From the IMG/VR virus record IMGVR_UViG_3300023179_000009, positions 310,001 to 374,000 of that record: DNA of 64,000 nucleotides; one strand, written 5' to 3'. Below the pieces are notes generated by a model. It worked only from the letters and a program-made list of their open reading frames with translations. It was not told the DNA's origin and searched no databases. The position numbers and the translations under genes were made by a program. This document shows, piece after piece, positions 8,329 to 24,335 of the stretch (within the stretch, counting starts at the first letter, position 1; the number at the start of each line of letters is the position of its first letter).

Positions 8329-8401
8329 GGTATACTACCTAGGATCGTGTTGCTCTTTGACAATTTGCTGCGGTGATGAAATTGGAAAACATAGCGGACT
8401 T

Positions 8402-9144
8402 GTGCATTTAATGTATTGAAAAATGTTTCTGCCATACTATAATAAAGTATGGAAAAAACATTAAAATGCGTTAAATGCAGTCAAGATCGTGATGTTGGCA
8501 GAAAAATGTGTCGGCCATGCTATCTTGAATACAAGCGTTCTTTGGAAAAACAACGCTATCAAGATAATGGAAGAAATAATTACCAAAAGACCTGTGCTGC
8601 TTGTCAAACAAGTTTTGAGGCATGGCGTAAGAAACAAATTTTTTGTTCTAACTGCCATAAATTAAAACTCAAGTTTGCAGCAGAAAGCAAAAGTACCAAT
8701 CAATATGTAAATATTGGTGGTAAAAATGAACACAGATCTATTGCTGAAAATGTTTTAGGATATAAATTGTCTTATAACATGGTTATTCACCATGTAGACG
8801 ATAATCCTAAAAACAATAAAATTAGCAATTTAATGGTAATGGATCGAAGGACACATGGAAGGCTACATCAATATCTTGATTGCCAACGAGTCATCATAGA
8901 GAAATCTATGAATGAGAACTGTGGAAATTGCTGGAAAGCCCTGATAGTTCCCATGACTACAGCATGGTTGGAAACGACGGGTGCGAAAGTTATAAAACTA
9001 TGGGAAATTGGGTAATCAGCAGCCGAGCCTCTTTAAAATGAGGAAGGTTCAGAGACTTATGCTCACAGCACCTTAACGAGTAAAGTCGAAGGTGAAGATA
9101 TAGTCCAAATGAGTAATCATGATGTGAAAGCATCAATCTCATTG
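8402..9144 (+). ncRNA. Group I intron carrying an HNH endonuclease gene
   Basis: P AAATTGCTGGAAA (8925), Q AATCAGCAG (9014), R GGTTCAGAGACT (9046), S AAGATATAGTCC (9095); exon ends in U and intron ends in G. Confidence 0.9.
8449..9015 (+). CDS. Intron-encoded HNH homing endonuclease
   Basis: EHRSIAE...VIHHVDDNPKNNKISNLMVM...H; N-terminal CxxC pairs; ORF runs into the intron core. Confidence 0.85.
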   Translation: MEKTLKCVKCSQDRDVGRKMCRPCYLEYKRSLEKQRYQDNGRNNYQKTCAACQTSFEAWRKKQIFCSNCHKLKLKFAAESKSTNQYVNIGGKNEHRSIAENVLGYKLSYNMVIHHVDDNPKNNKISNLMVMDRRTHGRLHQYLDCQRVIIEKSMNENCGNCWKALIVPMTTAWLETTGAKVIKLWEIG

Positions 9145-9256
9145 AAAATCCGCTGGTCGCAAGACCTTGAGGGTTCGAGTCCCTCCCGCAGTATTAGACA
9201 TTTGCAGTATAATTCAATAACACTTATCATTATGGGAACTATTCGTTGTTCCCATA

Positions 9257-9988: not shown

Positions 9989-10774
9989 ATGGCAAGACAA
10001 CGAAAATGGACAGATGATCAACTAATAGAGGCGGTTAAAACATCTCAAAGTTATTCGCAAGTTATTCAAAAACTTGGCTTGAAACTTTCTGGGGGAACTC
10101 ACGCCAATATCAAGTTAAATATTAGAAAATTAGGACTCGATACAGAACATATTACAGGTCAAGGTTGGTGTACTGGCGATTTTCATGTTCATTTAATTAA
10201 AAATTTTGTTAAGATACCTACTGAAAAAATATTGGTTAAGGACTCCGAATACACATCCACCCACAGACTAAAACATAGACTGTTTAAAGAAGGTTTGTTA
10301 GAACAGAAGTGCAGTAGTTGCGGATTAGGAACCAAATGGAATGGTAAATTTATTTCACTTCAATTAGATCACAAGGATGGTGATCGTTGTAACAATCAAA
10401 TTGACAACCTAAGAATTTTGTGTCCTAACTGCCACAGTCAGACCGAATCGTTTTGCGGCAAAAACATAAAGAAAAATAAAATAAATTGCCACAGTCAGAC
10501 TGACTCGTTTTGCGGTAAAAAGAAAAAGAAGAATAAAATAAAAGTCCGCAAAACAATTTGTGTTAACAAATGTGTTTTTTGTAATTTAGATTACGAAGCC
10601 AAAGATAAAAAACAAAAGTATTGTTCTTACGAGTGCCATAAAAAAAGTCTAAGGAAAATAGATCGTCCTTCAAAAGAACAATTGATAAATGAACTAGCGG
10701 AGAGTAATTATGTTCAAGTTGGAAAAAAATATGGCGTATCAGATAATGCGATAAGAAAATGGCTTAAACTCTAA
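9989..10774 (+). CDS. Free-standing HNH endonuclease between tRNA genes
   Basis: CSSCG...LQLDHKDGDRCNNQIDNLRILCPNCHSQT; C-terminal HTH-like segment (YVQVGKKYGVSDNAIRKW). Confidence 0.88.
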   Translation: MARQRKWTDDQLIEAVKTSQSYSQVIQKLGLKLSGGTHANIKLNIRKLGLDTEHITGQGWCTGDFHVHLIKNFVKIPTEKILVKDSEYTSTHRLKHRLFKEGLLEQKCSSCGLGTKWNGKFISLQLDHKDGDRCNNQIDNLRILCPNCHSQTESFCGKNIKKNKINCHSQTDSFCGKKKKKNKIKVRKTICVNKCVFCNLDYEAKDKKQKYCSYECHKKSLRKIDRPSKEQLINELAESNYVQVGKKYGVSDNAIRKWLKL

Positions 10775-23859: not shown

Positions 23860-24148
23860 TGCCCGATAGCTTAACTGGTAGAGCAAGGGATTTAACACAA
23901 AAAACTAGGATGCTTAAAAGGAAACTTTCAAAGTAGAACTGCTCAAATTCGGTGAACGGCCTGTTTCGCAAGAAACGACCCAATGCCGAGCCAAGCCGGG
24001 AAACCGGAAGGTGTAGAGACTTGACGGGCAGCACCTAAAACCACAAGGTAATGGTGAAGGCAAAGTCCAGACTACAAACCGAAAGGGTAGTGAAAACTAT
24101 AGTAGTATGTGGTTCCCTGGGTTGCAGGTTCGACTCCTGCTCGGGCAT
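23860..24148 (+). tRNA. trnQ: tRNA-Gln(UUG) split by a group I intron (exons 23860-23893 and 24110-24148)
   Basis: U1-A72 acceptor TGCCCGA/TCGGGCA; joined loop AGGGA-TTTTGGT-TCCCT; T arm GCAGG-TTCGACT-CCTGC. Confidence 0.8.
23894..24109 (+). ncRNA. ORF-less group I intron (216 nt)
   Basis: P AAATTCGGTGAA (23945), Q AATGCCGAG (23982), R GGTGTAGAGACT (24010), S AAGGCAAAGTCC (24057), terminal G. Confidence 0.88.
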
Positions 24149-24254: not shown

Positions 24255-24335
24255 ACCAGAGTGGCGGAATGGTAAACGCAGTTGACTGTTAATCAACCGT
24301 CGAAAGACCTGTAGGTTCGAGTCCTACCTCTGGTG
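24255..24335 (+). tRNA. trnN: tRNA-Asn(GUU) with long variable arm
   Basis: ACCAGAG/CTCTGGT+G, GTTGA-CTGTTAA-TCAAC, variable CGTCGAAAGACCT, GTAGG-TTCGAGT-CCTAC. Confidence 0.85.

What the first reader, a model, noticed from the sequence alone, without database searches (positions are those of the whole stretch)
23860..24148. Group I intron in tRNA-Gln(UUG)
Seen: a complete P/Q/R/S core interrupts a U1-A72 tRNA. Only splicing after U34 (exon ends in U, intron ends in G24109) gives a canonical 7-nt loop, TT-TTG-GT. Known: the classic bacterial tRNA group I intron sites are Leu-UAA, fMet/Ile-CAU and Arg-CCU. I do not recall Gln-UUG as a described site. tRNA scanners would probably miss or miscall this gene.
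Basis: partly seen in the sequence, partly recalled or inferred. Interest (0 to 1): 0.7.

Follow-up and report, generated by a model that had tools for sequence, protein, structure and literature searches.

The report
Self-splicing intron in phage tRNA-Gln
A giant freshwater phage carries a glutamine tRNA gene split in its anticodon loop by a small, intact-looking self-splicing (group I) intron, a site not seen among about 200 related introns examined here, and a sister copy in a lysine tRNA shows how a few changes in the intron's guide sequence re-aim it.

Summary
Window 23860-24148 (+) is a tRNA-Gln(UUG) gene. A 216-nt ORF-less group I intron (23894-24109) interrupts it between U34 and U35. 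RF00028 matches at 40.9 bits, which is significant but below Rfam's cut-off. Default ARAGORN and Rfam scans miss the gene.

Only one cut satisfies all three rules: the exon ends in U, the intron ends in G, and the loop has 7 nt. That cut gives loop UUUUGGU.

Supporting evidence:
- The guide sequence AACUA|GGAU pairs with both exon ends (P1 and P10).
- Across 45 related introns the guide changes with the host tRNA.
- 28 of 43 predicted core pairs show compensatory changes.
- Intron-less homologues with the same anticodon arm exist in 9 viral contigs and in marine metagenomes.
- A near-identical phage has an uninterrupted tRNA-Gln(UUG) in the same slot.

The nearest intron (91% identical core) sits in tRNA-Lys(UUU) of related phages. 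The family is mostly in tRNA-Leu(UAA). No second Gln copy appeared in viral, metagenome or bacterial scans.

Splicing itself is inferred. No RNA junction was seen. I rate this a new member of a known kind, of moderate to good interest.

The parts
23860..23893 (+). tRNA-Gln(UUG) exon 1: acceptor 5' strand (U1), D arm, anticodon stem 5' strand AGGGA, loop U32 U33 U34
23894..24109 (+). Group I intron, 216 nt, IC3-like, with no ORF of its own
   Evidence: RF00028 40.9 bits. ARAGORN -i. No endonuclease domain in any overlapping ORF.
24110..24148 (+). tRNA-Gln exon 2: U35 G36 G37 U38, anticodon stem 3' strand UCCCU, variable loop, T arm, acceptor 3' strand (A72), discriminator U73
23903..23911 (+). 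Internal guide sequence AACUA|GGAU. GGAU (23908-23911) pairs with exon 1 AUUU to form P1, with U34.G15 at the cut. AACUA (23903-23907) pairs with exon 2 UGGUU to form P10.
   Evidence: The guide changes with the host tRNA across the family.
23914..23931 (+). P2 hairpin, 7 bp with a GAAA tetraloop (23921-23924). Its A.C mismatch is a G-C pair in L087.
23939..23944 (+). P3 5' strand CUGCUC, which pairs with GGGCAG at 24026-24031
   Evidence: Compensatory changes. Coordinates.
23949..23989 (+). P4 (23949-23954 with 23984-23989), enclosing P5 (23958-23959 with 23979-23980) and the P5a hairpin GUUUC-GCAA-GAAAC (23963-23976)
23990..24012 (+). P6 (GCC with GGU) and the P6a hairpin CCGG-GAAA-CCGG (23996-24007)
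24013..24031 (+). J6/7, the P7 5' strand (G24016, bulged A24017, GACUU 24018-24022) and the P3 3' strand GGGCAG (24026-24031)
   Evidence: Invariant across the family, in part because these bases were in my search pattern. Coordinates.
24032..24056 (+). P8: CACC with GGUG, an internal loop resembling a tetraloop receptor, then ACC-ACAA-GGU
   Evidence: Compensatory changes. Coordinates.
24063..24068 (+). P7 3' strand AAGUCC. It pairs with 24016 and 24018-24022 and is the presumed guanosine-binding helix.
   Evidence: The assignment to G binding rests on knowledge of group I introns.
24071..24075 (+). P9.0 5' strand ACUAC, which pairs with GUAGU at 24102-24106, just before omega-G
   Evidence: By eye. 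L087 has UUAC with GUAA at the same places, a compensatory change.
24079..24100 (+). Small hairpin CC-GAAA-GG (24079-24086) and the P9 hairpin GUAGU-GAAA-ACUAU (24087-24100)
   Evidence: P9 has 20 and 15 double changes at two of its pairs.
24109..24109 (+). Omega-G, the last base of the intron

Best explanation
The locus is a phage tRNA-Gln(UUG) gene whose anticodon loop is interrupted between U34 and U35 by a 216-nt group I intron. The intron has no ORF and belongs to the small tRNA type (IC3-like).

Proposed mechanism. After transcription the intron folds into the usual P3-P9 core. Its guide sequence AACUA|GGAU pairs with the last four exon-1 bases (AUUU, with U34.G at the cut) to form P1. 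An external guanosine cleaves after U34. The guide's AACUA then holds the first bases of exon 2 (UGGUU, P10). The terminal G24109 enters the P7 pocket, positioned by P9.0. The exons are ligated to give a 73-nt tRNA with loop UUUUGGU and the U1-A72 pair typical of bacterial tRNA-Gln. This is the phage's only tRNA-Gln. It reads CAA, which the 35%-GC genome uses 5.6 times more often than CAG.

What is shown: the anatomy, the unique legal cut, the co-variation of the guide with the host tRNA, intron-less homologues, and synteny.

What is inferred: catalysis, the order of steps (taken from the established group I mechanism), and charging with glutamine.

Origin. The intron is a recent offshoot of a phage-borne family that lives mostly in tRNA-Leu(UAA). 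Its sister copy sits in tRNA-Lys(UUU) of related phages and differs mainly in the guide and the 3' tail.
For: Intron identity:
- RF00028 full-length match, E 3.3e-9 and 9e-10.
- RNAalifold on 45 unique family members recovers P2, P3, P4, P5, P6, P6a, P8 and P9. 28 of 43 predicted pairs have compensatory changes.
- Folding the intron alone recovers the P2, P4, P5a, P6a, P8 and P9 hairpins.

Splice site:
- There is one legal cut, TTT|TGGT.
- P1 is 4 bp and P10 is 5 bp, contiguous on the guide.
- In relatives the guide changes with the exons: Leu UUU|GAG, Lys UUAA|GAGU, Ala AUGC|GAG, Ser UUC|GAG, Asn UG|GCAG.

Identity of the tRNA:
- ARAGORN calls Gln on the spliced form.
- Nine viral contigs carry uninterrupted tRNA-Gln(UUG) genes 61-67/73 identical to it, with the same anticodon arm. 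One of them (L096) also has a separate tRNA-His.
- A marine contig runs from exon 1 straight into TGGTTCCC (X17). A seawater contig skips exactly 23894-24109 (X11).
- Locus L086, whose neighbouring protein is 96% identical, has an intron-less tRNA-Gln(UUG) in the same slot, before the same Asn-like and Lys tRNAs.

Maintenance and need:
- The same allele appears in metagenomes from several studies.
- The genome has no other tRNA-Gln or tRNA-His.
- CAA:CAG is 2782:501.

Origin:
- The core is 91% identical to the L087 tRNA-Lys intron.
- Tree support is 0.999 for that pair and 0.995 for a seven-member Leu/Lys/Gln clade.
Against: - No spliced RNA was seen. The metatranscriptomes I laid hold no junction read for this gene.
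- The RF00028 score is below Rfam's curated cut-off (40.9 against 50).
- P1 is weak: two A-U pairs and two G.U pairs.
- The discriminator is U73 rather than the G73 of E. coli tRNA-Gln, although the intron-less viral homologues share U73.
- P7 and part of J6/7 could not be tested by co-variation, because they were fixed in my search pattern.
- The X11 joint is reported as 'between: not known', so that single contig is weaker evidence than the X17 contig and the nine viral loci.
Confidence: 0.85

Rival explanations
1. The host gene is tRNA-His(GUG). Splicing would occur after U33, with the intron ending at U24108, giving loop UUGUGGU.
For: ARAGORN accepts this in-silico product as tRNA-His. The genome has no other tRNA-His.
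Against: - The intron would end in U rather than G. The cut-site U33 pairs with the second G of the guide, and the first base of exon 2 (G) would face a G in P10.
- Uninterrupted homologues read UUUUGGU, and one contig holds a separate His gene beside such a Gln gene.
- The syntenic gene in L086 is Gln.
- There is U1-A72 and no G-1.
Confidence: 0.02
2. The intron is a decayed, non-splicing insertion and the tRNA-Gln is a pseudogene. A weaker form of this rival is that splicing needs a host or phage protein.
For: - Splicing was not observed.
- The RF00028 score is below the gathering cut-off.
- P1 is weak.
- A near-identical phage carries a different, intact tRNA-Gln in this slot, so the interrupted allele is dispensable for the lineage.
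Against: - All core helices, the GNRA loops, omega-G and a guide matched to these particular exons are intact.
- The guide differs from that of the sister Lys intron in exactly the way needed for Gln exons.
- The allele recurs in metagenomes of different years and studies.
- It is the genome's only tRNA-Gln, in a genome rich in CAA codons.
Confidence: 0.1
3. The match is a chance resemblance or an assembly chimera that joins a tRNA to an unrelated intron.
For: The record is a metagenome assembly.
Against: - E-values of 1e-9.
- Both exon junctions are matched by the guide.
- Independent runs hold contigs that cover upstream-exon 1-intron and intron-exon 2-spacer with 0 to 6 differences (records 10, 15 and 29).
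Confidence: 0.01

Closest known systems
[quoted passage not shown]
   Same: Same insertion point (after U34, before N35), the same small ORF-less architecture, and the same conserved strings (UCAAAUUCGGUGAA, CCGAGCCAAG, GGUGUAGAGACUUGACGG, AAGUCCAG). 73-78% core identity to phage Leu copies. The intron nests inside a Leu-dominated clade.
   Different: The host tRNA is Gln(UUG). The guide is AACUA|GGAU instead of UUU|GAG. P1 contains two G.U pairs. There is an extra P5a hairpin, shared only with L087.
tRNA-Lys(UUU) intron of related phages (L087:4676-4886, and L359)
   Same: Nearest relative. The core is 91% identical, including the P5a hairpin, with the same 34/35 position. It lies in phages that share the neighbouring 136-146-aa protein at about 70% identity.
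   Different: The guide is AUAG|GAGU, roughly one inserted and one deleted base away from the Gln guide. The P9.0 and 3' tail differ. The host is tRNA-Lys. Other relatives have the same tRNA-Lys without the intron (L356, L357).
Azoarcus tRNA-Ile(CAU) and Agrobacterium tRNA-Arg(CCU) IC3 introns
   Same: Small tRNA introns with GNRA loops on P2 and P9 and the same core strings (Azoarcus sequence from memory). The bacterial scan found CAU and CCU hosts with this core.
   Different: Those introns sit after position 36 (CUCAU|AA, UUCCU|AA). They are in cellular genomes, not phages.
Phage group I introns in protein-coding genes (T4 td, nrdB and sunY; Twort; SPO1; also the Pelagibacter phage HTVC120P capsid gene seen here)
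   Same: Group I introns carried by phages. The HTVC120P capsid intron shares 74% identity with this core.
   Different: They interrupt mRNAs and often carry homing endonuclease genes. A 2014 review states that all phage introns known then were in protein genes, despite many phage tRNA genes (PMC3984707).

Membership tests
Group I intron (RF00028) | Covariance-model match to RF00028 at or above the curated gathering score (50 bits) | tested here: inconclusive
   40.9 bits over the full model (1-253), E 3.3e-9 locally and 9e-10 genome-wide. This is significant but under the cut-off. The cut-off is a curation threshold, not a structural criterion.
Group I intron (RF00028) | Conserved core helices P3-P8 (the P4-P6 and P3-P7-P8 domains), supported by co-variation | tested here: met
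   RNAalifold on 45 relatives recovers P2, P3, P4, P5, P6, P6a, P8 and P9. 28 of 43 predicted pairs show double changes. P7 is invariant and could not be tested, because it was part of the search pattern.
Group I intron (RF00028) | 5' exon ends in U, paired with G of an internal guide sequence (P1) | tested here: met
   U34.G15, within AUUU paired to GGAU. The same rule holds, with different guides, in Leu, Lys, Ala, Ser, Asn and Leu-CAA hosts.
Group I intron (RF00028) | Intron ends in G (omega-G), and exon 2 pairs with the guide (P10) | tested here: met
   G24109. UGGUU pairs with AACUA, directly 5' of the P1 part of the guide.
Group I intron (RF00028) | Guanosine-dependent self-splicing | not testable with these tools
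   No junction reads were seen in the RNA runs laid. An in vitro assay is needed.
IC3 tRNA-intron subgroup | Compact form: a single P2 with a GNRA loop, GNRA on P9, no P2.1 or P5abc extension, and a tetraloop-receptor-like internal loop in P8 | tested here: inconclusive
   L2 is GAAA and L9 is GAAA. The P8 internal loop is CCUAAA...UAAUGG. The subgroup criteria and the Azoarcus comparison come from memory, and no reference alignment was available.
Bacterial-type tRNA-Gln(UUG) | A cloverleaf with anticodon UUG after removal of the intron | tested here: met
   ARAGORN calls a 73-nt tRNA-Gln(ttg). U8, G18G19, U33 and T-loop UUCGA are present.
Bacterial-type tRNA-Gln(UUG) | U1-A72 first pair (recognised by GlnRS and GatCAB; established knowledge) | tested here: met
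   T23860 and A24147. Shared by the nine intron-less viral homologues and by L086.
Bacterial-type tRNA-Gln(UUG) | Uninterrupted homologues and a syntenic counterpart that are tRNA-Gln | tested here: met
   L095-L103, the X17 and X11 contigs, and L086:3850-3922.
Bacterial-type tRNA-Gln(UUG) | Charged with glutamine | not testable with these tools
   The discriminator is U73, not G73. The host is unknown.
Homing-endonuclease-bearing mobile intron | An endonuclease ORF inside the intron | tested here: not met
   The intron is 216 nt. Only mechanical ORFs overlap it, with no Pfam hit better than E 0.1. Neighbouring genes have no nuclease domain.

The most novel reading that the evidence does not exclude
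This ORF-less intron lineage may be currently mobile among the anticodon loops of phage tRNAs that have U34. It could move by reverse splicing or by recombination between co-infecting phages. A change of one or two bases in the guide sequence would be enough to re-aim it from Lys(UUU) to Gln(UUG). The window would then hold a freshly colonised site. A further, untested possibility is that such introns benefit the phage, for example by delaying tRNA maturation or by shielding the anticodon-loop sequence from host nucleases or from DNA-level targeting.
Probability: 0.25. Interest if true: 0.75.

Novelty: new member of a known kind. Interest (0 to 1): 0.55.

Why it matters
- It adds tRNA-Gln(UUG) to the short list of tRNA genes known to host group I introns, and it does so in a phage. 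A 2014 review said no tRNA introns had been seen in phages.
- It is one visible tip of a sizeable, unannotated family. I found 77 viral contigs with this intron core, most of them in tRNA genes. One further copy, found by blastn, is an unannotated split tRNA-Leu in the cultured jumbo phage Atu_ph07.
- Default tRNA and Rfam scans miss these genes, so phage tRNA inventories and codon-usage arguments are biased.
- The Gln and Lys pair has nearly the same ribozyme core with different guides. It is a natural experiment in retargeting a ribozyme, and it makes the old question of how ORF-less group I introns reach new sites directly testable.

Tried and rejected
- His(GUG) and 'Leu(UAA)' readings of the same gene. 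Both are rejected by the U-end and G-end rules, by P1 and P10, and by the homologues.
- Spliced RNA. Three metatranscriptomes and one DNA run were laid on the locus. They gave no junction for this gene, only an unspliced Lys-type copy from a related phage.
- A second Gln-hosted copy.
  - A 27-mer from P5 gave no viral hit.
All were chance matches in coding DNA.
  - The bacterial scan, also capped at 120, gave no Gln host.
- A homing endonuclease in or beside the intron. None was found.
- ARAGORN's isotype calls for relatives (Pro, Thr, Phe, 'Stop'). Several were re-read as Ile?, Asn, Leu and Lys by applying the group I rules and P1/P10 pairing. L010 remains unclear.
- The count of structure pairs was not used, to avoid typing a 328-character structure string. 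I used RNAalifold's pair table instead.
- Derivation from the phage's own tRNA-Leu intron (window 8402-9144). Rejected, because that core is clearly different.
- Literature. Eight searches found no report of a Gln-UUG group I intron or of phage tRNA group I introns. The library lacks most subscription journals, so this is not proof of absence.

Full report
**What is at the locus**

The window is bases 310001-374000 of a 458,813-bp IMG/VR virus record, 91% complete by CheckV and 34.9% GC. Reading 23860-24148 on the + strand gives the two halves of a class-I tRNA. The first half runs from the acceptor strand UGCCCGA through the D arm to the anticodon-stem strand AGGGA and then UUU. The second half is UGGU, then UCCCU, a 5-nt variable loop, the T arm and UCGGGCA. 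The two halves are separated by 216 nt.

ARAGORN in default mode and the Rfam gathering scan list five other tRNAs in the window but not this one. RF00028 does align end to end to the insert at 40.9 bits. The E-value is 3.3e-9 locally and 9e-10 against the whole genome, but the score is below the curated 50-bit cut-off. ARAGORN with intron search calls tRNA-Gln(ttg) with a 216-nt intron at 34/35.

**Where it is cut**

Three in-silico products fold as tRNAs: Gln-UUG, His-GUG and 'Leu-UAA'. Group I chemistry requires a U at the end of the 5' exon and a G at the end of the intron. Among all cuts that leave a 7-nt loop, only UUU|UGGU meets both conditions.

The intron's bases 10-18, AACUAGGAU, fit this cut exactly:
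- GGAU pairs with exon 1 AUUU. This is P1, with U34.G at the cut.
- The adjoining AACUA pairs with exon 2 UGGUU. This is P10.

The strongest support is comparative. I aligned 45 distinct relatives of this intron (alignment A1). The guide changes with the host tRNA so that both pairings are kept:

| Host tRNA | Guide (P10 part, then P1 part) | Exon 1 end, then exon 2 start |
|---|---|---|
| Leu(UAA) | UUU, GAG | CUU, AAA |
| Lys(UUU) | UUAA, GAGU | GCUU, UUAA |
| Ala(UGC) | AUGC, GAG | CUU, GCAU |
| Ser(UGA) | UUC, GAG | CUU, GAA |
| Asn(GUU) | UG, GCAG | CUGU, UA |

**Is the ribozyme intact?**

RNAalifold on A1 recovers P2, P3, P4, P5, P6, P6a, P8 and P9. Of 43 predicted pairs, 28 keep pairing through changes on both sides. 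One predicted four-pair helix, between exon GACU and AGUC of P7, is spurious.

In the window copy all these helices are present. They come with GAAA loops on P2, P6a and P9, a GCAA-capped P5a, and the P7 strands GACUU and AAGUC with a bulged A. A likely P9.0 (ACUAC with GUAGU) ends two bases before the terminal G. In the sister intron L087, P9.0 reads UUAC with GUAA, which is a compensatory change.

Folding the intron alone gives the same local hairpins, with z = -1.96.

P7 and J6/7 could not be tested by co-variation, because they were part of my retrieval pattern. The intron has no ORF of its own. ORFs overlapping it, and its neighbouring genes, show no endonuclease domain.

**Which tRNA is it?**

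- The spliced gene has U1-A72, the hallmark of bacterial tRNA-Gln (established knowledge). It also has the usual U8, G18G19, U33 and T-loop bases.
- Nine viral contigs hold uninterrupted tRNA-Gln(UUG) genes 61-67/73 identical to it. They share the same anticodon arm AGGGA-UUUUGGU-UCCCU and U73. One of these clusters also has a separate tRNA-His(GUG).
- In a marine metagenome (X17) a contig follows exon 1 to 23893 and continues directly with UGGUUCCC. In a seawater metagenome (X11) a contig skips exactly 23894-24109, although the tool does not state whether other letters lie between.
- Locus L086 is a Logan contig whose neighbouring protein is 96% identical. It has the same gene order: a 48-aa ORF, tRNA-Gln, an Asn-like tRNA, tRNA-Lys, then a 102-aa ORF. 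Its tRNA-Gln(UUG) is intron-less and has a different body.
- The genome has no other tRNA-Gln or tRNA-His.
- The genome uses CAA 2782 times against CAG 501 times in long ORFs, and almost all its tRNAs carry U34.

**Where the intron came from**

blastn and a pattern scan show that this core is common in viral contigs: 77 loci were found. Re-reading ARAGORN's calls with the group I rules, most copies sit in tRNAs with anticodon UAA at 34/35. A minority sit in Lys(UUU), Ala(UGC), Ser(UGA), Asn(GUU, after U35) and Leu(CAA, after U33). None is in Gln.

A capped scan of bacterial species genomes (120 loci) gave Leu-UAA, CAU, Arg-CCU and a few others, again with no Gln. Searches for the Gln-specific 3' junction in viral and metagenome contigs gave only chance matches.

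The nearest relative is an intron in tRNA-Lys(UUU) of phages that share the neighbouring protein at about 70% identity (L087, L359). Its core is 91% identical, including the P5a hairpin that other members lack. The guide (AUAG|GAGU against ACUA|GGAU) and the 3' tail differ. The same Lys-hosted core, with 4 differences over 195 nt, also appears in a DNA run and a metatranscriptome of one lake sample.

Other relatives carry the same tRNA-Lys without the intron (L356, L357). Presence or absence is therefore polymorphic in this phage group.

In a FastTree of the core the Gln and L087 copies pair with support 0.999. They lie in a seven-member clade with three Leu and two further Lys copies (0.995), inside a Leu-dominated clade. 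The rooting is midpoint only, so I do not claim a donor.

**How it most likely works**

As in other pre-tRNA group I introns, the transcript folds and P1 forms next to the intact anticodon stem. External guanosine cleaves after U34. P10 and P9.0 bring exon 2 and the terminal G into place, and ligation restores the loop.

These steps follow from the established mechanism together with the anatomy shown here. They were not observed directly. How the intron reached tRNA-Gln is open. The options are reverse splicing followed by recombination, or recombination between intron copies in co-infecting phages with later adjustment of the guide. The small difference between the Lys and Gln guides shows that few changes are needed.

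**Comparison with what is known, and novelty**

The kind of element is well known: small group I introns in tRNA anticodon loops. Examples are cyanobacterial and plastid Leu-UAA, fMet or Ile-CAU, and Arg-CCU.

A 2014 review states that all phage introns known then were in protein-coding genes, despite many phage tRNA genes (PMC3984707). The tRNAscan-SE 2.0 paper notes that the tool is not designed for group I introns. I found no paper describing a Gln-UUG site or phage tRNA group I introns. The library is incomplete, so this is not proof of absence.

I therefore rate the finding a new member of a known kind. It has added interest from the unannotated phage family and from the natural retargeting pair.

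Noticed in passing
window 8367-9193 (+): A second split tRNA in the same window: tRNA-Leu(UAA), cut CUU|AAAA, with a 743-nt group I intron (8402-9144). RF00028 scores 70 bits at 8868-9123. The intron contains an HNH endonuclease ORF (8449-9015; PF13392, E 5.5e-10). Its core differs from the Gln intron. ARAGORN finds it only when the intron limit is raised.
   Followed up: partly
window 24255-24335 (+): A tRNA with class-II shape (about 13-nt variable arm, 3-bp D stem, A1-U72, G73) but anticodon GUU (Asn). Copies 90% identical are annotated tRNA-Asn in Brevundimonas jumbo phages, and it follows tRNA-Gln in relatives. A long-arm tRNA with an Asn anticodon is unusual.
   Followed up: no
L024, L071, L019 and others (viral contigs): Many viral hosts of this intron family are 73-76-nt class-I tRNAs (short variable loop) with anticodon UAA, not the long-arm tRNA-Leu expected in bacteria. 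Their amino-acid identity is unclear.
   Followed up: no
L003:349-710 (Agrobacterium phage Atu_ph07, MF403008, about 112.9-113.3 kb): A cultured jumbo phage has an unannotated tRNA-Leu(UAA) split by a 278-nt intron of the same family. The record shows no tRNA feature there.
   Followed up: partly
L002 (Pelagibacter phage HTVC120P, 19.4-20.6 kb): The capsid gene is annotated as two CDS (gp29, gp30). They are separated by an intron whose core is 74% identical to the tRNA-Gln intron, so the same ribozyme type also occurs in a phage mRNA.
   Followed up: no
G000:C1:118256-118481 and 123151-123390 (outside the window; L004, L006): Two more strong RF00028 matches (98 and 65 bits) in the same phage genome, plus a weak one at 244963-245199. 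Their host genes were not resolved.
   Followed up: partly
L087:4998-5417: In the relative with the intron in tRNA-Lys, the next gene encodes a PD-(D/E)XK_5 (PF11645) protein. This could be a free-standing nuclease beside the split tRNA.
   Followed up: no
L010 (viral contig): One family member sits in a tRNA where no cut satisfies the rules cleanly. ARAGORN says Pro(UGG), while the U-end and G-end rule suggests Ile(UAU) cut after U33. Its P1 is unclear.
   Followed up: no
window 9989-10771 (+): A 261-aa ORF with an HNH_3 domain and a weak HTH_Tnp_1 match lies between tRNA-Leu(CAA) and tRNA-Ile(UAU). It may be a free-standing homing endonuclease in the tRNA cluster.
   Followed up: no
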